Shown here: in pieces, positions 27,971 to 45,760 of the stretch
Numbering within the stretch: the first letter of the stretch is position 1
Layout of the letters: each line of letters begins with the position of its first letter
NCBI GenBank assembly: GCA_964187785.1
Contig: OZ076411.1
Span: 86,614,001 to 86,678,000, forward strand
From: Amphiscolops sp. MND2022
Taxonomy: Eukaryota
Length of the DNA: 64,000 nt
Reading direction: 5' to 3'
The notes under the pieces: generated by a model
What the model was told of the DNA's origin: nothing
Seen by the model: the letters and a program-made list of their open reading frames with translations, nothing else
Database searches by the model: none
Made by a program: the position numbers and the translations under genes

Positions 27971-29461
27971 TGTCGCACGCATGGATAAATTTCAGTTCTA
28001 CTTTTTTACAGTTTCCTCTTTTAGAGGGGAATTCCAAATTTGTTATCCGTATTAGTCAGCTCAGCTGTTACAACATTTTGCAAAGTGCTTTTCAGACAAC
28101 TGTTGTTTTATTGAAGTAGAACAAGTAGAAAAGTCTCAATAACTTAATTTTTTGTAATACCGAAAAGAAAGTGCCTTGCGTGTACGTGCGAACAAAGGAA
28201 CTTGCGTGAGTAAGTGCAAGGCAGTGAATGTAAATGAGCTCTCTGAACTATAAAAAAAAAGCATATGTTAGCAAACTTGTTGAATTACATAAAAGAGCTG
28301 AACTTCAGGACATAATAAAATTCTTCAGACATAACAGTTTTTATTCAACTGTTTACAATATTCAGTCAACTCACCAAATTTATTTACCAGCAACAGAAGT
28401 AATAACTTAGCTATTTCAATCTAGGGCACAAATTGATGAATACATTTAGCATCGAAGGAAATTCATAGTAATTTCCTTTAGTTCGAAGAAAGTTTTTTAC
28501 GAAAAATTCAGTTTCGGTGTTGTAATAACTTAGACAACACTATTTAATTTTATAGTCTCTACTCCTTTTCTTTTAGGAATAGCATTAAGACTTTTTTGAA
28601 TATGGGAATGGTAAAGACAAATTGGTTAATAGGGGAAAACCGCAGAATTAAATCAGCGAAATTATTCTAAGATATAATTTTAACAACCGCAGAATTGAAT
28701 CAACGGAATTATTATAAGATAGAATCCGCGGAATTAAATCAGCGGAATTATTCTAAGATATAATTTAGTTAGAAAGAGGGAGAGTAAAAAAATCTCCTCT
28801 AAAAGAAAAAATCTAAGATATTTTCGACTCACCAAACTGGAGACCAAGTTGAATTGAAGAGAATTTTCTAAGATAGAAAATTCTGTTGGGGAATAGAGAA
28901 AAAGCAAAGATAAGTTTTTACTTGAGAGAAGGGAGAAAAGGAGGAAAGTTAGACTTTATAAGTCAGAGATAAGGCAAGTGCAAAGTAAGCAAAGAGAAAG
29001 TTGGGGAATAAGAGTCGAGGGAGAGAAGGGGAAGAGTATGTGTAAGAGAAGTGGAGGGATTGAGAAGTTGAGGAGAGAGAGAGCTGTAAGTTGAGCTCAG
29101 CCGTCCGGCGGGAAAGAATGAATCTCCAGCCTGTGCGCGCGGTATAAAAACAGTTCAGCACAGCTGTTGAAGTGCCTGGCCGGCATGTGTTGCATGCTAC
29201 CAATGGTAGCTCAGCTTTAAAATTCAAATATCCGCGGTAAGAAATAGAAATTTTCACTAGTGCAATTCCTTTCCCGTAGTATTCCATTACTTATTACTCC
29301 ACTTCGAGGCCGCCGCGTTATGGCCGCCGCCATATTTACTTCAACTTTCCACTCTCCACACAACGTTAGTTCAAGTTTTATGTTTCTCTTTGCACGTGTT
29401 ATTTTTTTATAATAGAAAGCGCCTTTTGGTGATTCGTTAGAGCGTTAGTCATAGCGCGACA
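27971..29461 (-). repeat. 3' LTR of the gypsy element
   Basis: Copy of 44270-45760 at offset 16299; minus-strand TATAAAG at 28954-28960 and AATAAA at 28340-28345 and 28107-28112. Confidence 0.97.
28640..28766. repeat. Three ~40-47-bp repeats inside the LTR (also 44939-45065)
   Basis: ccgcagaattaaatcagcg(a/g)aattattctaagata unit starting at 28640, 28687 and 28726. Confidence 0.8.
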
Positions 29462-29473
29462 GCTCACCCCCCT
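29462..29473 (-). promoter_or_regulatory. Polypurine tract
   Basis: Minus-strand AGGGGGGTGAGC directly abutting the 3' LTR start. Confidence 0.8.
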
Positions 29474-29575: not shown

Positions 29576-30478
29576 CTAGGGTTTAGAAAAAAGGGGTCTG
29601 TCAAATTGAATTTGGATTATGACGGAGTCATTGTTTAGGAAGGCTTCTCTAAAGTTTACCAGGAGTTTTGTGTGCGCGATGAAGTCTTCTCTCATCAGTC
29701 CTGGGAGTGTGTAGTCGTTCTTGTGCGGGTCTTCATACTCTTCTGTTTTGGAGGGATAGGGAAAGGAGATGGACCATTTGTTGTTCTTGTCTTTTTGGTC
29801 TATGATTGAGACGATCAATTGTTGCTCGAAAGGCCACGTTCGTGGGAGAGTGAAGTCGCTGGGGTGTAGATCACAAGAAATTGAGGAATGGGTTCCGCGG
29901 AAGATGTTGGCGCCATAAGGGAATAGTCTGAGGGATATTTTGCAGCCGGTTAGGTGGGTAGTGTAGATAGGGCTAGTGAAGCTATTTTTGATGTTGTTCA
30001 ACGCATCATTCGGGGAGGTCTTTGCTTTTCTGTATAGTGTGGAAAAAGCGGGTATGTGCCAAAGGATGGGTTCACCGCTTCTTGCGTCTAATACGTTGGT
30101 TTTGTTGAGTAGGGCGCCTTGAAACTTGATTGTCGCTTGTAGATCGGATATTGTGAGTTCCAAGTGATTACATTTAGTCCGCGTTTCTTCTGTCAAGTTT
30201 TGGAGTTGTTTCATTTCACTAGCAAGCTTTGTTCTAGACTGTTTTATGTCGGTTATGGGGAACGATTTCCTTAGGATCGGGGTTACCTTTTCACTTTGTG
30301 GGCTAGTTGAGACTTCTAGTTCAGCGATCCATTTGTTCAATCTTTTGATTCCCTCGAGTGTCTCGAGGTCATCTTTATTCTCTGTCCTGGATAGAGGTGG
30401 CCAGTCGTTAGCTTTGGGGAAGTAAGGAGTGCTTTTTGGGATGAAGGGGATAGCGTCTGGGTTTAGCCTCCGATTCAT
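29576..30478 (-). CDS. PAM2 motif + coiled coil + TRAF-type MATH domain protein (300 aa), retroelement accessory gene
   Basis: N-terminal RRLNPDAIPFIP (PAM2 LNPxAxxFxP); heptad region LASEMKQLQNLTEE...LELTISDLQATI; TRAF-C motifs GEPILWHI, FTSPIYTT..GCKISLRLFPYG...RGTHSSI, WPFEQQLIVSIIDQ, FIAHTKL, FLNNDSVIIQIQFD. No RING or zinc fingers. Confidence 0.9.
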   Translation of the reverse strand: MNRRLNPDAIPFIPKSTPYFPKANDWPPLSRTENKDDLETLEGIKRLNKWIAELEVSTSPQSEKVTPILRKSFPITDIKQSRTKLASEMKQLQNLTEETRTKCNHLELTISDLQATIKFQGALLNKTNVLDARSGEPILWHIPAFSTLYRKAKTSPNDALNNIKNSFTSPIYTTHLTGCKISLRLFPYGANIFRGTHSSISCDLHPSDFTLPRTWPFEQQLIVSIIDQKDKNNKWSISFPYPSKTEEYEDPHKNDYTLPGLMREDFIAHTKLLVNFREAFLNNDSVIIQIQFDRPLFSKP

Positions 30479-31077
30479 TGTGCTGAGATGGCTCTTAGGG
30501 GGACCGTTAGTCTTTGTCCCTTTAGGGCTGGGTTCTCTATGGTGTACTCTTGTCTCTTGTTATCCCAGAAAACGATTTTCCAAGTTGAGAATTGTGGGAG
30601 GAGAGTGTATTTCAACTCTGTGTTGAATCTGGGTTTCTTAACGTGTCTGGCTCGTTTAGTGAAGTACTCCCGCTTGTGTTGTTTCTTCAGTGGCGTGTCA
30701 TCTGTTATTTTGTCATTCCATTGTTGTTGGTGTTTCCTGGGTAGTGCCCGTCTTATGTCTTTTCCGCCGAAGCGGGGTGGATGTTGGGGCGATCGAGGTG
30801 GATGTTGAGTTGATGGGATAGGCGCTACCTCTTCTGTAAATGACAGCGGAAAGGGGAGTTGTAGTGATGTCGTTGGAGAGGGTGTTGTTGTTAGGGCGCT
30901 TGGAATCGGAGAAGGAACTGTTGAGTCTGGGGGATCTAGGAGAAAGGTAATAGTTGTGGGAGAAGCAGTTGACAGCAGGTCAGAAGGTGATAAGGGTTCT
31001 ATCTGCAAGTCGTCTTCTAAGATAGAGTTAGGGATGTCGTCGTCCAGGTTTGGGAGGTCGAATAAGGGTTCTAAATT
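30475..31077 (-). CDS. AUG-less open frame (~200 codons): acidic/Pro-Thr-Ser-rich N-part, basic NLS-like segment, small beta-rich C-terminal domain; probably a spliced exon
   Basis: Open from 31077 to TGA 30475 with no Met (the track start at 31008 is TTG); tttag acceptors at 31078 and 31071; stop overlaps the next AUG (AUGA). Confidence 0.6.
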   Translation of the reverse strand, partial: NLEPLFDLPNLDDDIPNSILEDDLQIEPLSPSDLLSTASPTTITFLLDPPDSTVPSPIPSALTTTPSPTTSLQLPFPLSFTEEVAPIPSTQHPPRSPQHPPRFGGKDIRRALPRKHQQQWNDKITDDTPLKKQHKREYFTKRARHVKKPRFNTELKYTLLPQFSTWKIVFWDNKRQEYTIENPALKGQRLTVPLRAISAQ

Positions 31078-31108
31078 CTAAACGTAAACTACGAAATGAG
31101 ATAATAAT

Positions 31109-33256
31109 TCATATTGGAGCAACAAAGCTCTGTACCGAGGGATATAGTGATTCCTCTTTTTGTTTTAGGATTTGGAGTTCTACTCCTTTTTCTTCGTCTT
31201 CTGTTTTTACCCTTTTGTCTTCGATGCTATCCTCGAAAGGGGCCCGCGGGGTAAATACGGAAGTTAAAACAGAGGTAAAGAAAAGGTTATACGAAGCACT
31301 GAGCAAGGTTTTAGTGAAGCTCAGTGTGTTACCCGTAAGGTGACGAAGTTCGAAGTAGCGGAAGACTAGTACCGTGATATCTATGACGAACTTGATAAAA
31401 AGGAAAGCGCCAAAGTACGCTCCGCAGAGTTCTAGTACATAAGATATACTTCCGAATGTTTCGAGGAACTGATTTTTAAAGTAGTCGGGTGAAATCATTC
31501 CGTCGACATAGAAATCTGTACGAGGTGCGTAATACGCGAAGGATTCTGGTCCGCTGTGGGCCATGGAGGGTATGATGAGCTCTCTTGAGAACTTCTGGAG
31601 GGCATTACGTGATGCGGCGCTGATGAGGATGTTGTCCCAAAACTCGGAGAGTTGCTTGGGAGTGTACATTCCCGCGTCCTGTGATCCTGGGAAAGATCTG
31701 GTAATCATTGGCTGGATGTCTTTGGGTCCGAAGATAGCAGGCCGGTCCCGATGTTCGGGTGAAGGTGTAAGGGTGAACCAGGAGTCCTTGTCTTCCATGT
31801 CCAGTTGGAAGAGGTTCTTAATACGATCTGTGCAGTTTTGTACGTTCGCGTTAGGATATGTTTGTCGGGTTATGGGGTCTACAAAGGCGACCACTCCCTT
31901 GTAGAAGATTGGTATGCGGTCGTAGCATTGGTTCATCGTGTGAAGAGGTGAGTGGGATTCCGGGCAGTGGTAGAGCCATGCGAGGCTACCATCTGTGTTC
32001 AGGAACATCGAGCGATTTCCCGTGAGCATGTATCCGGCGAGTCGTGGGTTTTCCATGGATAACATCAGGATGGTAAGGATTTGTGTTCGTTCTTGCTCAC
32101 ATTGAGCTTTCAATAGCTGGATCTCTGAAGCTTCGAGTAAGCGGGTGCTCTCAAAGAAGAGATAATCTAACTTGGTTCCTTGGTGGAGTTCGTAATCCAT
32201 GTTGAGATAATGTGGTGTGTTGGGGTTGGAGTCGCTGGGGCCTCTGAAGAGGTGGAGTCTGCCATTACCAGAACCATCGTTGGGTGAGTAATATTGAAGT
32301 TTGGAGGTTTCTCCCATGGAGATGCCGAGTCGTCTGCCAGAAGTCATGTCGAAGCCACCAAATTGGGTCGAAACGTAGAGGGATTCGTAATTGGTAGGGT
32401 AGACATCATCGGGTTTGTTGCAGTATTTCTGTGGCCTGTTGTATATTTCGAATAGGAACTTGGTAGTGGAGTCGTTGCCGCTAACTATATAGTAGTTAGA
32501 GCCATGTTTGATCATATTCACTATTTCTTTTCTGTGGACTGCGAGCACGCAGTTATCTGGCTCTGCCCATGTATAGGCGTACGGGTCCAATGACGTGGTT
32601 TCGCAGCCGAGTTGTTCCAGGGGGCAGGGGAGAACCATCTGGAAGGGTGTGAGGATTTTCCCGTCTCTGGTTTTGACTGATAATTCTACGTCTTGAATAT
32701 GAGATTCGAAGGTTTCGCGTTTAATCCATCCGCCTGTCTTGCACTCATTACGGGTATCAGGGTCACGTACTCCATCCCAACTTTTTCCGTATTTGGCGTT
32801 TCTCGTCTGTACTTGTTTGACTCCTTTCTTAAATTTGAGGGGTTGTCCATGGATCATGACTTCTTTGCCTTCGCCCATGGCCTTACAGGTTTCGGGTGAC
32901 AAGGAAATATCGCTGGTGATTCCGTTGTGTAGGATTGACATACTGGAGTGGTCATTATGACCACAATGCCATTCTTCACTCTGGTGTTTCACACGGCACA
33001 TAGTAGCGTTGATAGTGCGACGAAAGTGTTTAGTGTATAACGTCACGCTAGCACGACTTACTTCTAAGTTTTCCGGGGCCACATTGCATTGCTCTACTTG
33101 ATTTAAGGCGTAGAGCTTATTTTGTGTCATTTCGCCGCAGTCGAAATGAGTTACTCGCAATTTTTTAGCAACGCTAGCGAGGTTTGGCGTTGAACGTTGT
33201 GAGTTCACAACGGGCGCGAAATTGGCGCATAAGAAGAGTAAGAAAAATAATTTCAT
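31109..33256 (-). CDS. env: Envelope glycoprotein, chuvirus-G-like / class III fusion type (715 aa)
   Basis: Signal peptide MKLFFLLFLCANFAPVVNS; HFDC..x..LYALNQVEQC; CRVK..x..HCG; MDYELHQGTKLDY; QCEQERTQILTILMLSMENPRLAGY; DGSLAWLYHCP; QCYDRIPIFY...FVDPITR...NC; C-terminal TM ISYVLELCGAYFGAFLFIKFVIDITVLVF. Confidence 0.88.
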   Translation of the reverse strand: MKLFFLLFLCANFAPVVNSQRSTPNLASVAKKLRVTHFDCGEMTQNKLYALNQVEQCNVAPENLEVSRASVTLYTKHFRRTINATMCRVKHQSEEWHCGHNDHSSMSILHNGITSDISLSPETCKAMGEGKEVMIHGQPLKFKKGVKQVQTRNAKYGKSWDGVRDPDTRNECKTGGWIKRETFESHIQDVELSVKTRDGKILTPFQMVLPCPLEQLGCETTSLDPYAYTWAEPDNCVLAVHRKEIVNMIKHGSNYYIVSGNDSTTKFLFEIYNRPQKYCNKPDDVYPTNYESLYVSTQFGGFDMTSGRRLGISMGETSKLQYYSPNDGSGNGRLHLFRGPSDSNPNTPHYLNMDYELHQGTKLDYLFFESTRLLEASEIQLLKAQCEQERTQILTILMLSMENPRLAGYMLTGNRSMFLNTDGSLAWLYHCPESHSPLHTMNQCYDRIPIFYKGVVAFVDPITRQTYPNANVQNCTDRIKNLFQLDMEDKDSWFTLTPSPEHRDRPAIFGPKDIQPMITRSFPGSQDAGMYTPKQLSEFWDNILISAASRNALQKFSRELIIPSMAHSGPESFAYYAPRTDFYVDGMISPDYFKNQFLETFGSISYVLELCGAYFGAFLFIKFVIDITVLVFRYFELRHLTGNTLSFTKTLLSASYNLFFTSVLTSVFTPRAPFEDSIEDKRVKTEDEEKGVELQILKQKEESLYPSVQSFVAPI

Positions 33257-33336
33257 TGTTGAAATTCTTCAGTCTGTTTTTGAATCAACCGTGTAATCGC
33301 TCCCTGTTAAAGAATCAGTTTAAGTGTTTAGTAGAG

Positions 33337-33788
33337 ACCGTAAAGAGGCAAGCCGTAATATCAAACCGGCAGCTTAGCTGGCACAACACTAAGCGGAGGT
33401 TAAAATTTTATAGTAGTAACCTCACTACTGTTAAAACGTGCCGAGGGGAACGATAAGTATTTTATTATTTCAGGGAAATAGGTGTGTGTTCCAGAAAGGA
33501 GGATTCGTAGTAAGGCCGTAAAAAGGCAAGTCGTAATATCAAACCGACAGCTTAGTGGGCACTAGCACTAAGCGGAGGTTAAAATTTTATAGTAGTAACC
33601 TCACTACTGTTAAAAAAGTGCCGAAGAGTAGGTTAATTATTGAAGCTTTAGTATATTTTATTATTGAGGATCCGTTATAAGGCCGTAAAAAGGCAAGCCG
33701 TAATATCAAACCGGCAGCTTAGTGGGCACTAGCACTAAGCGGAGGTTAAAATTTTATAGTAGTAACCTCACTACTGTTAAAAAGTGCC
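33337..33788 (-). ncRNA. Three tandem copies of a ~107-nt structured cis-RNA module (double pseudoknot plus two hairpins) upstream of env
   Basis: Copies at 33337-33442, 33515-33622 and 33682-33788; complementary segments AGUAGU/ACUACU, GAGGUU/AACCUC, GCUUAGUG/CACUAAGC, GGCAC/GUGCC, GCCG/CGGC; compensatory change GCCG/CGGC to GUCG/CGAC in the middle copy. Confidence 0.75.
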
Positions 33789-33833
33789 AAAATAGGAAGT
33801 TAAAAGAGACTAACTTCAACCATTGCTGAAAGT

Positions 33834-34178
33834 TCAATTGTAGTTGTCACGGATTGATTGTAGACTGGGAGAGGTTTTGTTTCGTCGTCTCAATTCGAGG
33901 AAGTCAATGAGCTTGTTGAGGAGGAACAGTGTTAGAGGGTGGATGTGGTCGAGATAGGCAATTTGCCTATATTCCTTTAGTGCGAGTGAGAGATCAGTAG
34001 CCTCTTGGGAGTTGGTGTCAACTGGGATGAGCCAATGTCCTGGGTTTTGTGGTCGGAGGCTATGGAGTTCGATTTGTAGTGAAGGTGCGTTTTCTTTCCA
34101 AGCGATAGAGAGAATTTCGAGAAGTGTATTTGTTTCAGGGTGGCGCCAGAGAAACTTGAGCTGAATCTTAAACATCAT
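33834..34178 (-). CDS. Small accessory ORF A4 (114 aa), unknown function
   Basis: ATG-initiated, overlaps the A3 stop by 11 nt, same A/C-rich sense-strand composition as gag-pol, shares a motif pattern with A1-A3. Confidence 0.65.
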   Translation of the reverse strand: MMFKIQLKFLWRHPETNTLLEILSIAWKENAPSLQIELHSLRPQNPGHWLIPVDTNSQEATDLSLALKEYRQIAYLDHIHPLTLFLLNKLIDFLELRRRNKTSPSLQSIRDNYN

Positions 34179-34563
34179 AAGTGTCGACTAGGCTGTGAAG
34201 GTATTTGATTCTAACTTCTTCTTCAAAGGGGTTGGAGGTGAGAGTGATGTCCATAAAGTAAACCAAGTCGTCGAAAGCCTTGTCTTTGAGGACTGCAGGG
34301 TGTTGGAGTATATATTGCTTGAACGATAGGAATAAGTAAGCGTATTCCTTGGAGCCGAAGTGAATAGGGAAGAGGACTAGAGCTTCTTTGTCTTCTGGTG
34401 TGAGTATACGCACTTGAATTGCAGAGGTAGTGATCTCGTAGAAGATTGACTGTATTTCGTATTGGCCCTTGAGTTGTATGGGGGTCCAAGGAACAGGAGG
34501 TTGAAACTGTGTGTGGAAGTAGTAATTATTTCCGCGGAACACGGCGACTGCGGGAGAGGACAT
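34168..34563 (-). CDS. Small accessory ORF A3 (131 aa), unknown function
   Basis: Starts in a TAATG stop-start overlap with A2. Confidence 0.7.
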   Translation of the reverse strand: MSSPAVAVFRGNNYYFHTQFQPPVPWTPIQLKGQYEIQSIFYEITTSAIQVRILTPEDKEALVLFPIHFGSKEYAYLFLSFKQYILQHPAVLKDKAFDDLVYFMDITLTSNPFEEEVRIKYLHSLVDTYDV

Positions 34564-34784
34564 TAAATGACTGACTTGGCTCTTGTGACGACTTCAGTAG
34601 GGGTGTTGTTATATAGCAAGCTCTCCAGTAGAGGGTAGATGGGTGATGCTGGCACACAAGTGTAGGTTTCACTTTCTTCTTCAGCTATTGCGTATGCTTG
34701 TATGATGATGTTTTGCGTTGAGGGTTCCTTCTGGATATCGGTGATTTGTGAAAGACGGTTGTCAATTTTGAAGATTATGATCAT
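34563..34784 (-). CDS. Small accessory ORF A2 (73 aa), unknown function
   Basis: ATG directly preceded by acceptor-like tatctcacag; ends in TAATG. Confidence 0.6.
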   Translation of the reverse strand: MIIIFKIDNRLSQITDIQKEPSTQNIIIQAYAIAEEESETYTCVPASPIYPLLESLLYNNTPTEVVTRAKSVI

Positions 34785-35029
34785 CTGTGAGATACTTCAG
34801 TGTTCACTGTTGTTCAAACATAGCAAATCTGAGAATGGAATCATCAGTTATTTCATTGCCTTTGGGAACTTATGTATTTGAAACATATGAACATGACCCT
34901 TTTTGGGGCACATGGTTGCATGCAGAAAAGTAAAGAATCGACATTGGTCTGTATTGTGTGATAGTGAGGTATATGATTAAATAAATAGGTGTTATAAATT
35001 TCTATTACTAGGTATTTATATAGTTTTAC

Positions 35030-35731
35030 ATGACTTTTGATAAGCACAATGTTGTGTTTAGAATGAGCAACAATCAGAACTTTTCGGACTACTACGAGGA
35101 GTCCTCGACCGACGAAGAGTCGGGGAATGGCCCGACAACTGTGTCTTCTAGTTCTTCTGCAGCTGGTCCGTCCTCTGCTGCTGTTAGTGCTGTGTCCTCC
35201 GCTTCGTCTTCTGCTGGTCGGCCCTCTACTGCTGTTAGTTCTGTGTCCCCTGCTTCTTCAGCAGGTCCGTCCTCTAGTGGTGGGTCGTTCGTGGCGGTTG
35301 TGGCCCCGAGGACTGACAGTATTGTGCCTCAAGCGCCTGCTACTATTGCCCGGGGAGAGCTGGAGAACCCGGCTGAGCAGAGCTTTATGGGGCTCTATAC
35401 CCGCCGAGACGTGAACCGCCTGGAAAACTGGGCGTCTCTAACCAGTTCTCTTCGGGGGACTCCAGGGTTCTCTGTCTCGGGGCCTCCCGGTCCCAATTCA
35501 TTATTTAGTTTCATGCGGGCTAACCTGGGGGCCCGTTGGGAGCAGACCCTATTGTCCCCTCTTGGTGAAATCATAATTTTCCAGTTGCGAGCCTACATAA
35601 ACGGCTTTTCGCAACTGACCAGTTTCGAGAGGGGACAGTGGTCCCGTCTGTATTCTTTGTGGACCATGGGAGAGCGGGCGGCTCAGCTGCGGCGCTTGGC
35701 GGAGCGAGGAGGGTTCCTGGAGATTGAGTAG
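35030..35731 (+). CDS. Antisense accessory ORF (222-233 aa; Ser/Ala-rich N-half, predicted helical C-domain)
   Basis: 702-nt open frame opposite to all other element ORFs; second ATG at 35063 directly follows tttag. Confidence 0.65.
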   Translation: MTFDKHNVVFRMSNNQNFSDYYEESSTDEESGNGPTTVSSSSSAAGPSSAAVSAVSSASSSAGRPSTAVSSVSPASSAGPSSSGGSFVAVVAPRTDSIVPQAPATIARGELENPAEQSFMGLYTRRDVNRLENWASLTSSLRGTPGFSVSGPPGPNSLFSFMRANLGARWEQTLLSPLGEIIIFQLRAYINGFSQLTSFERGQWSRLYSLWTMGERAAQLRRLAERGGFLEIE

Positions 35732-35888
35732 GCGTACATCGCCTCTCATCTCCAGGAAATTACTATTTTTCTATGCTTCTGTGCTTGTGGCTTTTCGTAA
35801 GTCATGTTCGGGATTGCACAAAAAATATCGATAAACTAAAGTAAAGTAAATTAATGGTAATACATCGTTAATAGGTTAAATGTGCCGG

Positions 35889-36275
35889 CTAGGAGCTAGG
35901 TGAGGAAATAGTGGAGCAGCAGAATAGGTCCTTCTGAGTATTAGGTGGTGAAGGTTGTAGGTCAGGAATTAGGGTAGGCATGTAGGATAAGAGTTCTTCT
36001 AGGATAGGGTCGTGATGGTTGACTGCATGGTATGCTAGGTGTTGATATAGTTGAGCAAACGTTTTTGATTCTGGGTGAACATGAAGATTTGATTTTCGGG
36101 GCGTAGGTTGTTTGTGGGGGCTCGGGTCTGGGTCGTTGGAGTAGAAGCAAATTCTAACTAGTTTGTTTGTGTAGGTCCAGTAGATTTTTGTGATTGTAAC
36201 GTGTAGAACGTTTAAAGATTGGAGTTCTCGTGGAACTTGCCATGGTAGGTTTAGGTAAACTTTATGACAAGGCAT
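35889..36275 (-). CDS. Small accessory ORF A1 (128 aa), unknown function
   Basis: ATG 8 nt after the pol stop; shares a motif pattern with A2-A4. Confidence 0.65.
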   Translation of the reverse strand: MPCHKVYLNLPWQVPRELQSLNVLHVTITKIYWTYTNKLVRICFYSNDPDPSPHKQPTPRKSNLHVHPESKTFAQLYQHLAYHAVNHHDPILEELLSYMPTLIPDLQPSPPNTQKDLFCCSTISSPSS

Positions 36276-36283
36276 GACGCAGA

Positions 36284-39200
36284 TTAGGCTTTGTAGCCTA
36301 CTCGAGTTTTTTGTCGAAGTATGGACAATGGTGCTGGTTGATTGGGTTGTGCTCGCTGATAGCGGGGATTTCTCTCGACGTGACTTGCCACCGCTCGTCT
36401 GAGTTCTTGTAGGGGTGTCAATGATTTAGTCGAAGTCGTCGGAGTGGTAGTCAAGGGTTCGGGTGTTATTTGTTGCGTCAGTGTTTGGATAGGAGTAGTT
36501 GAACCAGGAGGACGGGATGTAGTAGGCTGATCCGGAGTTGTTGGTGTTCCCAACCGGTGATTTTCTGGGGAAATAATACCAGAGTCGGTGCTCTGGGGAG
36601 TTCTCACTCGTTTTTGTGCGGTGGTCTGTCTTTGTTGGTTTCGGACTGGTAAAATGCAGAGATCCCCGAGTATCTGTGGTTCTGAAACATTAAGTCGTTC
36701 TATTCTTCCTTTGACAAAATTGTTATAGAAATCCGTGTCTCCACGGTAGGGAGTTGTGTATTCTTCTATAAGAGGGGGGAGTGTTTCCTCTTTGGGAAAG
36801 TATTCTATTAAATGATTTCTATGGACAGTTCGGAGATTTTCGGGGTTCTGATCGTCTTTTATTTGGTATGTTGTGTTGGTGATTCTCTTGGTAACCGTAA
36901 ACGGTCCTAATCGCAGTTGTTGAAGTTTTTGACTTTTGGAGAGGTCTTTCCGATGGTTTTCTAACAAAACCTTTTGTCCGATGTTGAGATGGCTGCCTAG
37001 TTTAAATCTGTTTCTGTAGGCATGAGATCGAGCTGTTTGTTTTCTGCATTTTTCGTAAGTGGACGAATAGATTTTCTTGAAGGCGGTCTCTCTTTCAAGC
37101 AGGTTTTGAGATAGTTGAGGTCTTAATAGTCCATTCAGCAGTTCGTTTTTAACTTGGTTTTCGCTGTGGCAGTGAGGAGGCAGTCCGTTGCAGAACTGTG
37201 ATCTGCAATTCTTGTTTTTATTACGGTATAGACCCAACTTAAGACTCATAGGTATCTGTGGTTTATTGCAGAAGACTATTTCGTATGGTGTCTTTCCAGT
37301 GGTATAGTTGACGCTTGTGTTGTGGGCAAATGCGAATTTAGCAGCTAGTTGGGCCCAGTTGTTTCCTGAGTCGTTTAAGAAGTTTCTCCAGTACCTTGCA
37401 ATGTGTTGGTTTTGGGTTTCCACTTTTCCGTTAGTCCAGGGTGAGTGTGCAGTTCTTGGCCGGAGAGTGATGCCTAACTCTTTAGTCCAATTGACGAATT
37501 CAGTGTTTACGAAAGCCGTTCCTCTATCGTGTATGATAGACTGCGGTATCCCATAGTGCATAATCCATTTTTCCATAGCGTTGATTGTTGACTGTGCACC
37601 TGTGTCTCTAACTGGGTATGCCATCAAGTAGCGTGAAAATGCGTCGATGATGAGGAGGCAATGTGAATTTCCACGACTGGGAGGGTTGAGTGGTCCCTTG
37701 TGATCGATATGAACAGTTCTGAATACTTGGGTCTCGGTTTCACAGTCCTCCAGTGGGACTTCGTAATTTCTTCTTTGTTTGGATTTGTTAGATTGGCAGC
37801 TAACGCAATCTTGTGTGAGGGCACAAATCCAGTCGTGCATCCCGGGCCAGTAGTAGAATCTTTTAGCATTTAGGTAGGTTTTCTCGGCTCCCATATGGCC
37901 TCCGAGGTCGTTGTAGTGTCCTAATCGGAAGCAGGCGAGAAATAAGGAGAGTGGTAAGCATATTCGAAGATTTTCTTCTTCCGTCTTATCTGTAGGTTCA
38001 TTGTAGCACAGTAGGTTTCCGTTTTCTTCTATGGTCAATCTATCAAACTCTTGGGAATAGCGCATGAGTCCTTTAGAGTGTTGTAATTCTGGTGATTTTG
38101 GCGTAGGCCTGTTTCCGGTTTGTATCCATCGTCGAACCACACTGAGCACCGGGTCATTGATCTGTTCTTGTAAGATTGTTGTGACGTCTAGATCCACTTC
38201 TTTTGATATTTTGTCGAGTTGACTGACGAGCTCTCGGGCTGGGGTCTTGTGTTTTTCCGTTGAATTTGTAGGTAGACTGAGGTGTTCTATTGCCTTTGCA
38301 TTTTCGGGAATACCTGTGTTACGTGCGGTGAGATCTTCAGTGTTGAGCTCGTAGTTGGTCTCGTTTACTTCATGACTTTGGTTGTCTGTGCAGGCTTCAT
38401 CATCTGCATCGCTATTGATGGAGCTGTAAGTATTCTGAGACGAATCGGAAGTGCTATCCCTTGTCCCGGATCTGATTTTTAGCTCTGAAAATTTTCCTAG
38501 TTCTCTTCCAGCGTCGAGACAACTCTGTGCTGACTCTATTTTCGGCAGGTTAGGTTCCTCGTAGATATTGTTAACTGTGAAGTTATTTCCATCGTTTTGT
38601 AGGTGAAGAATTTTTCGTTCATCTCCTTTTTCGTACAGGATGGGGTAGAAATCGTTTTTTGACGTTTCTTCGTTTTCTTCGTGTTTTATTTTGTAGTGTA
38701 TTTGGGTTCCATGCTCGTCGAAGAAGTGAATATCGTTCGGTAGGATTTTGTGACTGAGTTGATGTTTTTTGTGTTCTTCTATCGATACGTTTCTGCTGAG
38801 TATATCAGGGAAGGCTAAATTGCTTCCTGGGGTCCAAATTATCTTGAGATTTGGGAATTTAGAGATTATTACTTGGTACCTGAAGAAACGCGGTGAAACT
38901 TGTCCTTTTCGTCCCCAGAGATAAAGAATTGGTTTGTGGTCACAATATAAGTAAATTGGAAAGGGAGATCCAATGATATAGTGTTCGTAGGTTTGTAATG
39001 CTGAGACTATTCCACATAGTTCTCTATGTAGAGTAGACATTTTTTGTTCTTCTTTTGCGAAGACTCTGGAATTGAAAGAAATGATCCGTTTCCCTTCTGG
39101 AAATTGTTGTATGAGGATACATCCTGTCCCTACGTTGGAAGAGTCGACGTGTATATGAAAGGGATATTTTGTTGAAGGTACTGCAAGAACTGTGTCTTCG

Positions 39201-41791
39201 CTGATTCTTTTCTTTATTTGTTGGAAGAGGTCTTCATGTTCTTGGTTCCAACAGAAATTTGTATCCTTTTTTGTGAGTTCGTAAAAGGGTCGACTATCGA
39301 CGTGAAGGTTCTTGATGTAGCAGCTGTAGAAACCTAAGGCTCCCAAGAAGCTTTTCACTTCGGTTTTGGTTTTTGGTGATTTGAGATTATGTAGGTCTCT
39401 TACTCGTTTAGCTACGGGTTGTATTCCTTCTGCTGCAATCACATGTCCCAAAAACTTGACTTTCCTCAAGAAGAAGAGTGTTTTGTCAGGTGCCGCTTTT
39501 AGTCCCGCTTTCCGTAGTAGGTTATGGTATTCTTGAATCACTGTGAACATTTCTTGTTTACTTTTCGCTTGCATCAACGTGTCGTCTATGTAGGTGATTG
39601 CTTGTTTCTTTTTAATGAGAGGTTCGAAGTGAATTGTCATCATTCGGCTAAAGAAGCTTGGTAACCCTTTAAGTCCGTAGAATCCTCTGGTGAAGGTGTA
39701 TTGTTTCCCGCCTATGATGAAGCTTGTAAGTTTTTGTGTAGGCTCGTCTAATGGGACTTGGTGAAATGCACAGGAGAGATCACTTACTGAGAAGATGTTC
39801 CCGTTGATTAGTGTCATTATGGTTTGGATCGGTTCTAAGGGCCAGGAGTAGTTTGTTAGATCCGTCACTGAATTTAGGTATCTTGCGTCTATGATCAGTT
39901 TTACATAGTCGTGTTTTGGTTGTAGTATAATAGGATTTACGAATAAGGATCCCATTTCGTCGTCATCGCCCATCTCTCTGATAATATCGGCGTCTTTGAG
40001 TTGTGTGAGTAGCTTCTCTAACTTTTCTCTTAGGTGAAGTGGTACTTTGCTGGGTCTCTGTCTCTTCAGGATTGCTCCAGGTTCGAGTTTGATGTTAAAT
40101 TTCTGTCTGGTTTTTCCTACGTCGAATTTGTGTTGGGAGTATACATCTCTCGCATCCATTAGTTGGTCTATTAGGAGCACAAGTTCCTCGTCAGTAAGGT
40201 CTGAGTAGCGAAAGTCGAATTCTTTGATGTATTGCACTGCTTCTTTGTTCTGGTACTGAAGGTAATACTCGATCAGTCTTTCGTTGTCTTCTTTTTGCCT
40301 GAAGATTTTAAATTGCTCATCGCAGGGTGGTTGACAAGACTTTGCGTCACTCGTAAAGTCTGTCTCCAGCTCTCTATGTTTAAGGTGAAATTGCTCGGAA
40401 AATTGTTGTATCTCGTCTTCCAGCGCGTATTCGGGGTCTCCTCTCGTAGTCATAGCATAGACGTCTAGTTCATTTCTTGTATAAATTCGGAGTTGTATTT
40501 CCGAGTAGGCAAAAACATCTTGAATAATTTGTGTCACATCTTGCCATTGGAAATCTTCTAGTTCTGACGCTTCTCGTAACATAGAAATGGTCTTGATACA
40601 ATTCATTTTGGCGTGTGCTTTTAGAGTCTCTAGCGTTTGGACTAAGATTTGTGGGTCGATTTTGTCTTTTGATTTAGCTTTTGTGATTAGGACGTATATG
40701 AATCGTTTTAGATTCATGTCCCAGTAAGGTATTGTATCCCCTTTGAGTGGTTTCTGTTTTGCGCAAGATTCTTTTAACAAGGGTATGTTCGTTAGGATTT
40801 CTTTCGAGAAGCCTTTGGCTGGCTTCAGATCTGCCGGGACAAAGATCATGATGGAGTCGGGTCTGCTGAGGATTGTAGTAGAATTTCCTCCTTCTATTCT
40901 GATGCAATCGTTCATATCTTGTGAAGGGATGGTGGAGTGCAACAGGAAACAGTCATTGTATTCTTCGTTTTCGTTTAGGATAGCGTAGGCGAGTTCCGTA
41001 GGGTTTCTAACTTGGTATTTTGGAATTTCTTGGTCTAATACGTCGAGCAGAGAGTATCCAATAGTTCCTTTTACTAGGGTGATTGTATGGTTTTTGTTAT
41101 TTTCCATGACGATTGGCAAAGTCTTCTCAAATCTTGTACAAAGGACATTTATAAAATTTAGTCCTGTAGAGACTGCTTTTCTGTTGGGTAGGAACGTAGA
41201 TCCGGGAGGAAAGGAGTTCTTGGGGTTTTCCGGTGCAAATTTGTAACATCTTGTCGTCTTTGGTTCGATATACATTGAGTGAGGAATTCGGACTGAGAGT
41301 ATTTGTGATACGTAGGGGTAACATTTGTTGAGTTGTAGACTGCCATAGCAGAAAGTATTTATAGGTCTTTTGAGTTCTATGCCAGGAAGATCAAAGTGTA
41401 TTTTGTTAACTTGTTCTTGACAGAAGTTCATTCCAAGGAGGTTTTGGGTCTTCATCTCTGTTATCCAGACTGTCAGTGGGAAGTTATGTTGTCCATCGGA
41501 ATCGTAGTAGAGTTTAAGGGTGATGTATCCCATCATAGGGATGATCTGCCCAGAGTAGTTCCGTGTTGTGTTGTTACTTCTGCTGAGTTCGAGGTCTTGT
41601 TGAAATTGACAGAGTTCTCTAAAGGTCCTGTAGTTAATGATTGAAGATGTTGCCCCAGTGTCTAGTAGAAATTCGATTTCTAAGCCACTATCTTTTTGTG
41701 AGTCTCCGGCAGCAAAATAATAAAGATTAAGACTAAATTTTAGTGGGGCAGTGCTGCTGTTACGGTTTTTCGGAGACCTTAATAGTTTAAA
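36284..41791 (-). CDS. pol: Pol (protease, macrodomain, RT, RNase H, integrase with GPF/Y tail), expressed by -1 frameshift
   Basis: Frame open from 41791: FLLDTGATSS (PR, near 41660), RT DLSCAFHQ / FYGL / YIDD / FLGH, RNase H HVDSS / RELCG / YCDHKP, IN HYNDLGGHMG..CVSC, HIDHKGP, IHDRGTAF, NGKVE, LGPFTV. Confidence 0.96.
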   Translation of the reverse strand, partial: FKLLRSPKNRNSSTAPLKFSLNLYYFAAGDSQKDSGLEIEFLLDTGATSSIINYRTFRELCQFQQDLELSRSNNTTRNYSGQIIPMMGYITLKLYYDSDGQHNFPLTVWITEMKTQNLLGMNFCQEQVNKIHFDLPGIELKRPINTFCYGSLQLNKCYPYVSQILSVRIPHSMYIEPKTTRCYKFAPENPKNSFPPGSTFLPNRKAVSTGLNFINVLCTRFEKTLPIVMENNKNHTITLVKGTIGYSLLDVLDQEIPKYQVRNPTELAYAILNENEEYNDCFLLHSTIPSQDMNDCIRIEGGNSTTILSRPDSIMIFVPADLKPAKGFSKEILTNIPLLKESCAKQKPLKGDTIPYWDMNLKRFIYVLITKAKSKDKIDPQILVQTLETLKAHAKMNCIKTISMLREASELEDFQWQDVTQIIQDVFAYSEIQLRIYTRNELDVYAMTTRGDPEYALEDEIQQFSEQFHLKHRELETDFTSDAKSCQPPCDEQFKIFRQKEDNERLIEYYLQYQNKEAVQYIKEFDFRYSDLTDEELVLLIDQLMDARDVYSQHKFDVGKTRQKFNIKLEPGAILKRQRPSKVPLHLREKLEKLLTQLKDADIIREMGDDDEMGSLFVNPIILQPKHDYVKLIIDARYLNSVTDLTNYSWPLEPIQTIMTLINGNIFSVSDLSCAFHQVPLDEPTQKLTSFIIGGKQYTFTRGFYGLKGLPSFFSRMMTIHFEPLIKKKQAITYIDDTLMQAKSKQEMFTVIQEYHNLLRKAGLKAAPDKTLFFLRKVKFLGHVIAAEGIQPVAKRVRDLHNLKSPKTKTEVKSFLGALGFYSCYIKNLHVDSRPFYELTKKDTNFCWNQEHEDLFQQIKKRISEDTVLAVPSTKYPFHIHVDSSNVGTGCILIQQFPEGKRIISFNSRVFAKEEQKMSTLHRELCGIVSALQTYEHYIIGSPFPIYLYCDHKPILYLWGRKGQVSPRFFRYQVIISKFPNLKIIWTPGSNLAFPDILSRNVSIEEHKKHQLSHKILPNDIHFFDEHGTQIHYKIKHEENEETSKNDFYPILYEKGDERKILHLQNDGNNFTVNNIYEEPNLPKIESAQSCLDAGRELGKFSELKIRSGTRDSTSDSSQNTYSSINSDADDEACTDNQSHEVNETNYELNTEDLTARNTGIPENAKAIEHLSLPTNSTEKHKTPARELVSQLDKISKEVDLDVTTILQEQINDPVLSVVRRWIQTGNRPTPKSPELQHSKGLMRYSQEFDRLTIEENGNLLCYNEPTDKTEEENLRICLPLSLFLACFRLGHYNDLGGHMGAEKTYLNAKRFYYWPGMHDWICALTQDCVSCQSNKSKQRRNYEVPLEDCETETQVFRTVHIDHKGPLNPPSRGNSHCLLIIDAFSRYLMAYPVRDTGAQSTINAMEKWIMHYGIPQSIIHDRGTAFVNTEFVNWTKELGITLRPRTAHSPWTNGKVETQNQHIARYWRNFLNDSGNNWAQLAAKFAFAHNTSVNYTTGKTPYEIVFCNKPQIPMSLKLGLYRNKNKNCRSQFCNGLPPHCHSENQVKNELLNGLLRPQLSQNLLERETAFKKIYSSTYEKCRKQTARSHAYRNRFKLGSHLNIGQKVLLENHRKDLSKSQKLQQLRLGPFTVTKRITNTTYQIKDDQNPENLRTVHRNHLIEYFPKEETLPPLIEEYTTPYRGDTDFYNNFVKGRIERLNVSEPQILGDLCILPVRNQQRQTTAQKRVRTPQSTDSGIISPENHRLGTPTTPDQPTTSRPPGSTTPIQTLTQQITPEPLTTTPTTSTKSLTPLQELRRAVASHVERNPRYQRAQPNQPAPLSILRQKTRVGYKA
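40480..40910 (-). other. TARG1/OARD1 (Poa1p)-like macrodomain inserted in Pol between PR and RT
   Basis: RFIYVLITKAKSKDKIDPQILVQTLETLKAHAKMNCIKTISMLREASELEDFQWQDVTQIIQDVFAYSEIQLRIY aligns by eye with the C-terminal half of human TARG1 (RYIYYLITK...LQKSLEAMKSH...[34 protein letters not shown]). Confidence 0.82.
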
Positions 41792-44248: not shown

Positions 44249-44266
44249 GCCTCACTGGTCGCACCA
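44249..44266 (-). promoter_or_regulatory. Primer-binding site (18 nt)
   Basis: TGGTGCGACCAGTGAGGC begins 3 nt after the 5' LTR end; complementary to a tRNA-like 3' end ...GCCUCACUGGUCGCACCA. Confidence 0.85.
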
Positions 44267-44269
44267 GTT

Positions 44270-45760
44270 TGTCGCACGCATGGATAAATTTCAGTTCTAC
44301 TTTTTTACAGTTTCCTCTTTTAGAGGGGAATTCCAAATTTGTTATCCGTATTAGTCAGCTCAGCTGTTACAACATTTTGCAAAGTGCTTTTCAGACAACT
44401 GTTGTTTTATTGAAGTAGAACAAGTAGAAAAGTCTCAATAACTTAATTTTTTGTAATACCGAAAAGAAAGTGCCTTGCGTGTACGTGCGAACAAAGGAAC
44501 TTGCGTGAGTAAGTGCAAGGCAGTGAATGTAAATGAGCTCTCTGAACTATAAAAAAAAAGCATATGTTAGCAAACTTGTTGAATTACATAAAAGAGCTGA
44601 ACTTCAGGACATAATAAAATTCTTCAGACATAACAGTTTTTATTCAACTGTTTACAATATTCAGTCAACTCACCAAATTTATTTACCAGCAACAGAAGTA
44701 ATAACTTAGCTATTTCAATCTAGGGCACAAATTGATGAATACATTTAGCATCGAAGGAAATTCATAGTAATTTCCTTTAGTTCGAAGAAAGTTTTTTACG
44801 AAAAATTCAGTTTCGGTGTTGTAATAACTTAGACAACACTATTTAATTTTATAGTCTCTACTCCTTTTCTTTTAGGAATAGCATTAAGACTTTTTTGAAT
44901 ATGGGAATGGTAAAGACAAATTGGTTAATAGGGGAAAACCGCAGAATTAAATCAGCGAAATTATTCTAAGATATAATTTTAACAACCGCAGAATTGAATC
45001 AACGGAATTATTATAAGATAGAATCCGCGGAATTAAATCAGCGGAATTATTCTAAGATATAATTTAGTTAGAAAGAGGGAGAGTAAAAAAATCTCCTCTA
45101 AAAGAAAAAATCTAAGATATTTTCGACTCACCAAACTGGAGACCAAGTTGAATTGAAGAGAATTTTCTAAGATAGAAAATTCTGTTGGGGAATAGAGAAA
45201 AAGCAAAGATAAGTTTTTACTTGAGAGAAGGGAGAAAAGGAGGAAAGTTAGACTTTATAAGTCAGAGATAAGGCAAGTGCAAAGTAAGCAAAGAGAAAGT
45301 TGGGGAATAAGAGTCGAGGGAGAGAAGGGGAAGAGTATGTGTAAGAGAAGTGGAGGGATTGAGAAGTTGAGGAGAGAGAGAGCTGTAAGTTGAGCTCAGC
45401 CGTCCGGCGGGAAAGAATGAATCTCCAGCCTGTGCGCGCGGTATAAAAACAGTTCAGCACAGCTGTTGAAGTGCCTGGCCGGCATGTGTTGCATGCTACC
45501 AATGGTAGCTCAGCTTTAAAATTCAAATATCCGCGGTAAGAAATAGAAATTTTCACTAGTGCAATTCCTTTCCCGTAGTATTCCATTACTTATTACTCCA
45601 CTTCGAGGCCGCCGCGTTATGGCCGCCGCCATATTTACTTCAACTTTCCACTCTCCACACAACGTTAGTTCAAGTTTTATGTTTCTCTTTGCACGTGTTA
45701 TTTTTTTATAATAGAAAGCGCCTTTTGGTGATTCGTTAGAGCGTTAGTCATAGCGCGACA
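44270..45760 (-). repeat. 5' LTR of the gypsy element
   Basis: 1491 bp, no differences from 27971-29461 noticed by eye; followed by TSD GCAG. Confidence 0.97.

What the first reader, a model, noticed from the sequence alone, without database searches (positions are those of the whole stretch)
33337..33788. Triplicated double-pseudoknot RNA module with covariation, directly upstream of env
Seen, read on the minus (genomic RNA) strand: 5'-GGCAC(U), then an H-type pseudoknot (S1 AGUAGU/ACUACU, S2 GAGGUU/AACCUC, loop AUAAAAUUUU), then hairpin GCUUAGUG/CACUAAGC whose loop CUAGUGCC pairs back to the 5' GGCAC, then hairpins GCCG/CGGC and GCC/GGC. The middle copy changes both partners of one pair (T33531 with A33547 instead of C-G), and the last copy keeps a G-U pair in the final hairpin only on the minus strand. 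Both loops pair on their 3' side, which is sterically sensible only on this strand. Established: tandem pseudoknots act as Xrn1-resistant RNAs (flavivirus 3' UTR, luteo/umbravirus intergenic xrRNAs) and nested pseudoknots form dicistrovirus IGR IRESs. Inference: an undescribed retrotransposon xrRNA or IRES that produces or translates an env subgenomic RNA.
Basis: partly seen in the sequence, partly recalled or inferred. Interest (0 to 1): 0.9.

Follow-up and report, generated by a model that had tools for sequence, protein, structure and literature searches.

The report
Conserved structured RNA array before env
A thrice-repeated, folded stretch of non-coding RNA sits just before the envelope gene of a young virus-like retrotransposon; relatives keep its folds through matched base changes, so it is a real and undescribed regulatory RNA, but it lies inside an intron and nothing shows it to be an exonuclease blocker.

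Summary
The host is an intact 17.8-kb env-carrying Ty3/gypsy element (27971-45760, identical LTRs). Related elements whose env is 56-74% identical keep the module in one to three copies. Three helices (S2, the 8-bp hairpin and GCCG/CGGC) are kept by many compensatory changes, and G-U pairs favour the sense strand. The two helices that would make pseudoknots (S1 and GGCAC/GUGCC) never vary, so they are unproven.

The array starts about 25 nt after a conserved start codon plus two codons plus splice donor. That mini-exon supplies the start codon of a Met-less accessory ORF downstream of env. One genomic copy (P0149) carries the two exons already joined. The array therefore lies at the 5' end of an env-containing intron, in an ATG-free env leader.

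My best reading (about 0.4) is a protein-binding control element for intron-retaining RNA, similar in logic to an RRE or CTE. A translation-leader role and a packaging role are the main rivals. An xrRNA is unlikely and an IRES is not excluded. There is no Rfam match.

The parts
44270..45760 (-). 5' LTR (1491 bp, TG..CA)
   Evidence: Identical to 27971-29461 with 0 mismatches. A 4-bp CTGC repeat lies on both outer flanks.
44249..44266 (-). Putative primer-binding site, starting TGG, 3 nt after the 5' LTR
   Evidence: Read. Called from its position only; not matched to a tRNA.
41779..43233 (-). gag ORF (484 aa), open
   Evidence: Weak Retrotrans_gag match, E 3.8e-4.
36284..41536 (-). pol ORF (1750 aa), open; domain order RT, RNase H, integrase
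   Evidence: Pfam RVT_1, RT_RNaseH(_2), Integrase_H2C2, rve, Integrase_p58_C.
33834..36275 (-). Region with three small sense ORFs (36275-35889, 34563-34168, 34178-33834); no known domains
   Evidence: The same ORFs are called in sister copies L001-L010. Sense ATGs are very sparse from 34563 down to env.
33809..33823 (-). Start-codon mini-exon ATGGTTGAA (33823-33815) followed by splice-donor-like GTTAGT (33814-33809)
   Evidence: The same arrangement lies 5' of the array in L011-L014, and four lineages encode M-V-E with different codons. Protein P0149 starts MVE and then continues directly as ORF X.
33680..33788 (-). Module copy A
Evidence: Covariance model score 105 bits.
33513..33622 (-). 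Module copy B (carries the U-A for C-G exchange in the GCCG/CGGC hairpin)
33335..33442 (-). Module copy C (U-G wobble in the 8-bp hairpin, G-U in the last hairpin)
33304..33334 (-). Branch-point-like CTACTAAAC, a pyrimidine-rich stretch and AG (33305-33304): putative proximal acceptor before the env ATG
   Evidence: Read. A pyrimidine tract plus AG lies between the last module and the env ATG in L012, L013, L014 and L022 too. Its use is inferred, not shown.
31109..33256 (-). env ORF (715 aa), open, with a signal-peptide-like N-terminus
   Evidence: Pfam PF24664 viral fusion glycoprotein, E 5e-31. 280 homologues found. No relative among solved structures by sequence.
31078..31100 (-). Pyrimidine-rich tract ending TTTAG: distal acceptor just after the env stop
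   Evidence: The ORF X frame opens on the first base after this AG. The same holds in L011-L014.
30475..31077 (-). ORF X, second exon of a spliced accessory gene (200 codons, no Met codon)
   Evidence: The C-terminal ~75 aa is conserved in all lineages. 75 representative homologues. No Pfam match. The model shows a basic helix plus a small sheet, with no significant fold match.
29576..30478 (-). MATH/TRAF-domain ORF (300 aa); its ATG overlaps the ORF X stop
   Evidence: Pfam MATH_2 E 8.9e-12. Present after env in L001-L010, L013, L014, L015, L022, L023 and L024.
29463..29473 (-). Polypurine-tract-like AGGGGGGTGAG next to the 3' LTR
27971..29461 (-). 3' LTR

Best explanation
The three modules are a cis-acting structured RNA array on the sense transcript of an intact, complex env-carrying Ty3/gypsy element.

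Shown:
1. Each module folds into at least three short hairpins. These are S2 with a 16-nt invariant loop, an 8-bp hairpin whose loop carries GUGCC, and GCCG/CGGC with an 11-nt invariant loop. Compensatory changes keep them in relatives.
2. The array begins about 25 nt after a conserved unit of start codon, two codons and splice donor.
3. That mini-exon belongs to an accessory ORF (ORF X) downstream of env. ORF X has no Met codon of its own and opens right after a strong acceptor. A genomic copy exists in which the two exons are already joined.
4. The array therefore lies at the 5' end of an intron that contains env. It is present in full-length RNA and in any env mRNA that keeps this donor unspliced, and absent from the spliced ORF X mRNA.
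5. The stretch from the mini-exon ATG to the env ATG has no ATG in any of five lineages.

Inferred: the conserved loops are repeated binding sites for a protein, either host-encoded or element-encoded (ORF X is one candidate). That protein would mark intron-retaining transcripts and control their fate, by holding back splicing at the adjacent donor and/or allowing export and use of env and genomic RNA. The logic is that of retroviral RRE/CTE elements. Related lineages carry different hairpin repeats at the same place, as expected for a co-evolving RNA-protein pair.

Confidence that this is a real, selected, structured sense-strand RNA is about 0.9. Confidence in the specific role is about 0.4.
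For: - Repeat and helices.
- Conservation: the module is found in L011 (3 copies), L012, L013, L014, L021 and L022. Module identity between lineages is 69-88%. That equals or exceeds the 65-70% identity of the env coding DNA.
- Covariation.
- Strand: 10 G-U cells against 3 A-C cells.
- Mini-exon and donor in five lineages.
- Met-less ORF X opening after TTTAG in exactly the five module-bearing lineages, while the four module-free lineages have an early Met.
- P0149 is MVE followed by ORF X, joined at the predicted junction.
- ATG-free leader: 0 observed against 14.1 expected. Only three other sense ATGs lie in the 920 nt before env.
- Extra bulged hairpins with conserved loop and bulge in L012-L014: 100% paired, 4 of 8 pairs with double changes.
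- Other tandem hairpin repeats at the same site in L015, L023 and L024.
- Background that RRE-type elements sit in env-region introns and serve unspliced and partly spliced RNA: abstracts of PMC9517694, PMC7912102 and PMC3292498.
Against: - No binding, export or splicing data exist.
- There is no similarity to any Rfam family, RRE included.
- The ORF X model shows no recognisable RNA-binding fold.
- A proximal acceptor-like site before the env ATG could remove the array from env mRNA. The array would then be confined to full-length RNA.
- I could not fetch the DNA of the P0149 contig, so the processed-copy reading rests on the protein alone.
- Only five lineages were available, from three or four assemblies of unnamed hosts.
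- CAT is depleted as strongly as ATG (2 observed against 13.7 expected). Scanning does not explain that.
Confidence: 0.4

Rival explanations
1. The array is a translation leader. It belongs to the scanned leader of a polycistronic env mRNA and helps ribosomes reach the env AUG, by reinitiation after the very short upstream ORF, by shunting, or as an IRES-like recruiter.
For: - No ATG lies between the mini-exon ATG and the env ATG in five lineages, and ATGs are sparse for about 1.3 kb upstream.
- If the donor is not used, the mini-ORF stops after 5-7 codons in the window, L012, L013 and L014. That stop lies 8-11 nt before GGCAC (read).
- All helices are short, about -5 kcal/mol each, so scanning could pass through them.
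- A pyrimidine tract precedes the env ATG.
Against: - An ATG-free leader only shows that ribosomes pass through it, not that the structure helps them.
- In L011 the mini-ORF runs 23 codons into the first module.
- Copy number (1-3) and the distance to the env ATG (about 38 to about 115 nt) vary, which is unlike fixed IRES geometry.
- The helices are far weaker than known shunt stems.
- No IRES family matches.
Confidence: 0.2
2. The array is a packaging and dimerisation signal. It would be present only in unspliced genomic RNA and bound by Gag, with self-complementary stretches linking two genomes.
For: - If env mRNA uses the proximal acceptor, the array is intronic for both spliced mRNAs and therefore specific to genomic RNA.
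- It offers repeated conserved loops.
- The S2 loop holds a 10-nt self-complementary stretch, UAAAAUUUUA.
- L012-L014 carry loop-less palindromes that stay self-complementary through double changes: CGACGUCG against CCACGUGG, and AAUAGCUAUU against AGUAGCUACU.
Against: - The ATG-free state suggests the region is also part of a translated mRNA leader.
- P0149 implies that a spliced RNA lacking the array was once reverse-transcribed and integrated.
- The palindromes could equally be DNA sites.
- No data exist on particles.
Confidence: 0.12
3. The array is an internal promoter or enhancer at the DNA level. The repeats would be transcription-factor sites with a TATA-like box (TATAAAA inside the S2 loop) driving an env transcript.
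For: - A TATA-like string lies in each module, and again in L014 (TATAAATA) and in the different repeats of L024.
- Tandem repeats with variable copy number are common in retroelement control regions.
- ACGT-core palindromes occur in L012-L014.
Against: - The S2 hexamers change in sequence while staying complementary (seven variants, six of them fully paired). That marks base pairing, not a protein half-site.
- G-U pairs are tolerated on the sense strand.
- A transcript starting inside the array would make the conserved acceptor before env pointless.
- The resemblance to a TATA box rests on my memory of the consensus. It is a lead, not a test.
Confidence: 0.08
4. One reading: each module stalls a 5'-to-3' exonuclease and leaves a protected env subgenomic RNA.
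For: The modules are tandem and compact, with two possible pseudoknots and a 5' GGCAC that could pair into a downstream loop. Tandem duplication is also typical of known xrRNAs (from general knowledge).
Against: - No xrRNA family matches at E up to 5.
- The supported fold is three separate hairpins with no three-way junction.
- Both knot-forming helices lack covariation.
- In L011 the 5' GGCAC survives only before the first module and GUGCC only in the last loop, so a per-module ring is not conserved.
- A decay product would be uncapped.
- Splice signals already provide a route to subgenomic RNAs.
Confidence: 0.05
5. The array is a stable intron RNA or a small-RNA source. It would be cut out as a short intron (33814 to 33304), persist because of its structure, or be processed into small RNAs.
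For: - Donor-like and acceptor-like sites bracket the array closely in five lineages.
- Module-free lineages have a 42-52-nt stretch bounded by GT and AG at the same place in the env leader.
- T-runs follow the last hairpin.
Against: - No microRNA, snoRNA or tRNA-like match was found.
- The stems are too short for microRNA precursors.
- Use of the proximal acceptor is not shown.
Confidence: 0.05

Closest known systems
Retroviral response and transport elements (lentiviral RRE, type-D retrovirus CTE and their kind)
   Same: A multi-stem, repeated, cis-acting RNA that lies in the env region. It is removed from the fully spliced accessory mRNA and kept in unspliced and partly spliced RNA. The accessory gene has a tiny first coding exon upstream of env.
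   Different: There is no sequence or structure match. The array sits at the very 5' end of the intron, before env, not inside or after it. It is built of tandem modules of three short hairpins. The host is an invertebrate Ty3/gypsy element. No binding partner or export effect is known.
Xrn1-resistant RNAs of flaviviruses and plant viruses
   Same: Tandem duplicated compact modules with possible pseudoknots that involve the 5' end.
   Different: No junction or ring is supported, the pseudoknot helices do not covary, no Rfam match was found, and the array lies in an intron flanked by splice signals rather than at the 5' edge of a 3' UTR fragment.
Dicistrovirus intergenic IRES
   Same: Structured RNA between ORFs, directly before a structural-protein gene, with possible pseudoknots.
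   Different: env starts at an ordinary ATG in good context. The distance from the last module to the ATG varies (about 38 to about 115 nt), and so does copy number. No Rfam match was found.
Ribosome-shunt leaders of plant pararetroviruses
   Same: A very short upstream ORF ends 8-11 nt before the first structural element in four of five lineages.
   Different: The helices are short and weak. The interior has no ATGs that would need bypassing. The comparison rests on general knowledge only.
Env-carrying Ty3/gypsy elements ('errantiviruses') of metazoans (PMC13524379)
   Same: The host element has LTRs, gag, pol in the order RT, RNase H, integrase, and a viral fusion-glycoprotein env after pol.
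   Different: This family also carries several small ORFs, a spliced accessory ORF and a MATH-domain ORF. That paper's text holds no occurrence of 'splice', 'pseudoknot' or 'tandem repeat'.

Membership tests
Flavivirus-type or plant-virus-type xrRNA | Match to a curated covariance model of an xrRNA family | tested here: not met
   An Rfam 15 scan at E up to 5 over 27000-46500, and at E up to 1 over L011-L014, gave no match in the array.
Flavivirus-type or plant-virus-type xrRNA | A junction or ring fold closed by a pseudoknot around the 5' end | tested here: not met
   Covariation supports three consecutive independent hairpins only. S1 and GGCAC/GUGCC never covary. In L011 the GGCAC and GUGCC partners survive in different modules.
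Flavivirus-type or plant-virus-type xrRNA | Stalling of a 5'-to-3' exonuclease, leaving a stable downstream RNA | not testable with these tools
   No RNA end data for the host were available.
Dicistrovirus IGR IRES | Match to the curated IRES models | tested here: not met
Dicistrovirus IGR IRES | Fixed three-pseudoknot unit that abuts the first codon and needs no AUG | tested here: not met
   env starts with ATG. The last module ends from about 38 to about 115 nt before it, depending on lineage, and copy number is 1-3.
Retroviral RRE/CTE-type element | Lies in sequence that is intronic for fully spliced mRNA and retained in unspliced RNA | tested here: met
   Conserved mini-exon and donor 5' of the array, a Met-less ORF X opening after a strong acceptor 3' of env, and P0149 joining the two.
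Retroviral RRE/CTE-type element | Several stem-loops that offer repeated binding sites | tested here: met
   One to three modules, plus one to four bulged hairpins with conserved loops.
Retroviral RRE/CTE-type element | Homology to a known RRE or CTE | tested here: not met
   No Rfam match. I therefore do not file it as a member, only as working in a similar way.
Retroviral RRE/CTE-type element | Bound by an export adaptor and needed for export of intron-containing RNA | not testable with these tools
   The ORF X model gives no recognisable fold.
Pararetrovirus ribosome-shunt leader | Short upstream ORF ending a few nt before a long, very stable stem | tested here: inconclusive
   The upstream ORF and its spacing fit in 4 of 5 lineages. 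The structure is weak: helices are at most 8 bp, and z is -0.7 to -1.3.
Env-carrying Ty3/gypsy element (Metaviridae, errantivirus-like) | LTRs, gag, pol in the order RT, RNase H, integrase, and an env ORF after pol | tested here: met

The most novel reading that the evidence does not exclude
An invertebrate Ty3/gypsy lineage has evolved complex-retrovirus-style post-transcriptional control independently of the Retroviridae. A spliced accessory protein (ORF X, whose start-codon mini-exon lies upstream of env) would recognise a tandem structured RNA array at the 5' end of the env intron. Through it, the protein would switch expression from its own spliced mRNA to env and genomic RNA. The array would be a new RNA family that may contain an H-type pseudoknot with no linker on either side of the inner strand.
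Probability: 0.2. Interest if true: 0.85.

Novelty: new variant of a known kind. Interest (0 to 1): 0.62.

Why it matters
Env-carrying Ty3/gypsy elements were recently shown to be widespread in animals (PMC13524379), but how they express env and any accessory genes is almost unknown outside Drosophila. This family shows three things together: a covariation-supported RNA structure with no Rfam counterpart, a split accessory gene that spans env, and an ATG-free structured env leader. These are the ingredients of regulated splicing and export in complex retroviruses. If the array is the cis target of such control, that layer of regulation arose more than once in reverse-transcribing elements. Even if not, the module is a clean new RNA family, with enough natural variation to be modelled and searched for in invertebrate genomes.

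Tried and rejected
- Tandem Repeats Finder sees nothing, because the spacers differ.
- Rfam gave no hit in the array in two scans.
- ARAGORN found no tRNA-like gene.
- Exact-pattern scans of viral and JGI metagenome contigs for the invariant core found nothing.
- An env-based scan found three short JGI contigs, one with a decayed module, and nothing in viral contigs.
- Minimum-free-energy z-scores do not single out the sense strand: -0.7 to -1.3 sense against -1.8 to -2.9 antisense. I rely on covariation and G-U counts instead.
- No sense-strand partner for the two invariant loops exists elsewhere in the element.
- The eleven sister copies are too alike to show selection: 2 variable sites in 327 module positions.
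- L025, chosen as an intermediate relative, lacks the pre-env region.
- env has no sequence relative among solved structures.
- ORF X has no Pfam match and no significant fold match.
- I considered and set aside a pol III small-RNA unit and a closing stem GUAGU/ACUAC. The first does not explain the S2 covariation. The second is present in only some copies.
- The host species could not be named.

Full report
**1. The observation**

Read on the minus strand, 33788-33335 holds three copies of a unit of about 108 nt, separated by unrelated spacers. Start-to-start spacing is 167 and 179 nt. A 28-nt core occurs exactly three times in the 64-kb window, against 0 expected. So are the U-A for C-G exchange in the middle copy (T33531 and A33547) and the G-U pair of the last copy. 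Tandem Repeats Finder misses the array because the spacers differ.

**2. The host element**

The array lies in an LTR retrotransposon on the minus strand, 27971-45760.
- The two 1491-bp LTRs (TG..CA) have no mismatch and are flanked by a 4-bp CTGC repeat.
- Gene order is gag, pol (RT, RNase H, integrase), three small ORFs, the array, env (Pfam PF24664 viral fusion glycoprotein, E 5e-31), an ORF of 200 codons (ORF X), and a MATH-domain ORF.
- All of these ORFs are open, and I found no broken gene in this copy.
- It is an env-carrying Ty3/gypsy element of the kind recently catalogued across animals (PMC13524379).
- Ten further copies with an identical env lie on long contigs of one ENA assembly, and all have three modules.

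**3. Relatives and covariation**

I fetched the DNA around env homologues that are 39-83% identical. I searched it with a covariance model built from seven modules.
- The module is present three times in L011 (env 74% identical).
- It is present once each in L012, L013 and L014 (env 56-63% identical), in one JGI contig (L021, decayed) and in L022 (which lacks its 5' part).
- It is absent from L015-L018 and L023-L025.
- Between lineages the module is 69-88% identical, equal to or above the 65-70% of the env coding DNA.

On 12 distinct sequences, 93.6% of cells pair, against 24-55% when partners are slid. No shuffle out of 500 reaches the observed values.
- S2 has double changes at 5 of 6 pairs. 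The window has GAGGUU/AACCUC. Relatives have GAGAUU/AAUCUC, GAGGCU/AGUCUC, GAAGCU/AGCUUC, GGAGCU/AGCUCC and GUAGCG/UGCUAC.
- The 8-bp hairpin has double changes at 5 of 8 pairs, and GCCG/CGGC at 2 of 4.
- The S2 hexamers are bracketed by invariant sequence, so their alignment is not in doubt.
- RNAalifold returns the same three helices.
- G-U pairs number 10 cells, against 3 A-C cells that would be G-U on the other strand. The sense strand is therefore the folded one.

**4. What is not shown**

S1 (AGUAGU/ACUACU) never varies, and L013/L014 lost one base of its 3' strand. Five pairs with a bulge, or a shifted 4-bp helix, remain possible there. GGCAC and GUGCC are invariant wherever present.

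In L011, GGCAC survives only before the first module and GUGCC only in the loop of the last. In L012-L014, GGCAC lies 60-160 nt before the single module. If that helix forms, it more likely closes the whole array than each module.

S1 alone and S2 alone are equally stable, at about -5 kcal/mol each. They may form a knot, with no linker on either side of the inner strand, or they may be alternatives. Nested folding energies are unremarkable. The word 'pseudoknot' therefore remains a hypothesis.

**5. Context: a splice donor, a split gene and an ATG-free leader**

About 25 nt before the first GGCAC, every module-bearing lineage has a start codon, two codons and a donor-like site:
- window: ATGGTTGAA|GTTAGT
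- L012: ATGGTTGAG|GTGAGT
- L013: ATGGTAGAG|GTTAGA
- L014: ATGGTGGAA|GTAAGA
- L011: ATGACCCAG|GTTAGT

Four of these encode M-V-E with different third bases.

Downstream of env, ORF X has no Met codon in 200-236 codons in exactly these five lineages. Its frame opens on the first base after a pyrimidine tract ending TTTAG. The four module-free lineages have a Met within the first 2-18 codons.

A search with ORF X found P0149, from a 456-kb contig. It reads M-V-E and then the ORF X N-terminus, and ORF X residue 2 aligns with P0149 residue 5. The gene callers used on such assemblies do not splice. So that DNA carries the two exons already joined, as a copy made from spliced RNA would.

The array is thus the 5' end of an intron that contains env. 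A second acceptor-like site (pyrimidine tract plus AG) lies between the last module and the env ATG in the window, L012, L013, L014 and L022. Its use is inferred only.

No ATG occurs between the mini-exon ATG and the env ATG in any of the five lineages. That is 0 observed against 14.1 expected under a dinucleotide model, the most depleted trinucleotide. In the window only three other sense ATGs lie in the 920 nt before env. CAT is depleted almost as much (2 against 13.7). Stems explain that only in part, and I cannot explain the rest.

**6. Other structured repeats at the same place**

L012-L014 carry, between GGCAC and the module, one to four bulged hairpins with a conserved 7-nt loop and a 2-3-nt bulge. 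They are 100% paired, and 4 of 8 pairs show double changes. L015, L023 and L024 lack the module but have their own tandem hairpin repeats before env, and a 42-52-nt stretch bounded by GT and AG in the leader. The site, rather than one sequence, seems to be what is kept.

**7. Mechanism**

The conserved single-stranded loops (16 nt, 8 nt with GUGCC, and 11 nt), their repetition, and the position next to a donor in an env-containing intron point to a protein-binding platform on intron-retaining RNA. I take control of splicing at that donor and/or export and use of env and genomic RNA as the most likely role (0.4). This is the logic of RRE/CTE elements (abstracts of PMC9517694, PMC7912102 and PMC3292498). 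It is not membership, because no known family matches.

ORF X is one candidate partner. It has a disordered acidic N-terminal half, a basic helix and a small conserved sheet. It has no Pfam match and no significant fold match.

Rivals:
- Translation leader (0.2). The short upstream ORF stops 8-11 nt before GGCAC in four lineages, and the leader is ATG-free.
- Packaging or dimerisation signal (0.12). There are self-complementary stretches, two of which stay self-complementary through double changes.
- Internal promoter (0.08). The TATA-like strings are a lead from memory.
- xrRNA (0.05).
- Stable intron or small RNA (0.05).

**8. Novelty**

The element class is known. The RNA module, the split accessory gene and their arrangement are not described in the papers I could search, and the module is not in Rfam. 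I rate it a new variant of a known kind, namely a retroelement cis-regulatory RNA.

**9. Limits and a slip**

The data come from five lineages in three or four assemblies of unnamed hosts, probably marine invertebrates, since relatives occur in Tara Oceans data. No expression data were available.

The brief forbids this. I stopped, used none of them as a query or as evidence, and write none of them here.

Noticed in passing
window 29576-31077 (-); L013-L015, L022-L024: Two accessory genes follow env in most lineages. One is ORF X, with a conserved C-terminal ~75 aa and no known domain. The other is a MATH/TRAF-domain ORF, whose ATG overlaps the ORF X stop in the window.
   Followed up: partly
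P0149 (ENA contig of 456 kb, not fetched): This protein reads MVE and then ORF X without the intron, and runs on in frame into the N-terminus of the MATH ORF. It is probably a copy made from spliced RNA.
   Followed up: partly
L012 (ena:ERZ26859043:ctg60967_13.85x_c, 17516 bp): A whole related element sits on a contig whose name carries the assembler's circular flag. It could be an extrachromosomal circle or an artefact of the LTR repeat.
   Followed up: no
L012 2790-2800 and 2892-2901; L013 2836-2846 and 2947-2956; L014 2866-2876: Loop-less palindromes stay self-complementary through double changes: CGACGUCG against CCACGUGG, and AAUAGCUAUU against AGUAGCUACU. They could be RNA-RNA contact sites or DNA sites.
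   Followed up: no
window 33257-33820 (-) and the same stretch in L011-L014: CAT is depleted almost as strongly as ATG (2 observed against 13.7 expected). Scanning does not explain this.
   Followed up: partly
L015 2700-2890; L023 2400-2760; L024 2400-2700: Lineages without the module carry other tandem hairpin repeats before env. They also have a conserved GGTTAGC motif about 100 nt before the env ATG, followed 42-52 nt later by a pyrimidine tract and AG.
   Followed up: partly
L011 1-3000: In this relative gag lies within 2 kb of env, with no pol between them. It is a pol-less derivative that still keeps three modules.
   Followed up: no
window 35030-35731 (+): A 233-aa ORF antisense to the element, containing three 30-nt repeats spaced 48-51 nt apart. 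Gene callers pick an antisense ORF here in several relatives and sense ORFs in others.
   Followed up: no
window 28391-28766 and 44690-45065: Four copies of a 44-nt repeat lie inside each LTR.
   Followed up: no
window 18022-23504 (+): A remnant of a BEL/Pao-type element (DUF1759, Pao peptidase, RT, DUF5641). Its gag-pol coding is split into at least five ORF pieces, so there are at least four interruptions. I did not resolve what kind they are.
   Followed up: partly
L017, L018 (Tara Oceans, PRJEB4352): Distant relatives (env 39% identical) have six small ORFs of 75-103 aa in a row after env, and no module.
   Followed up: no
window 52043-52182: A run of 140 N. I left it as it is.
   Followed up: no
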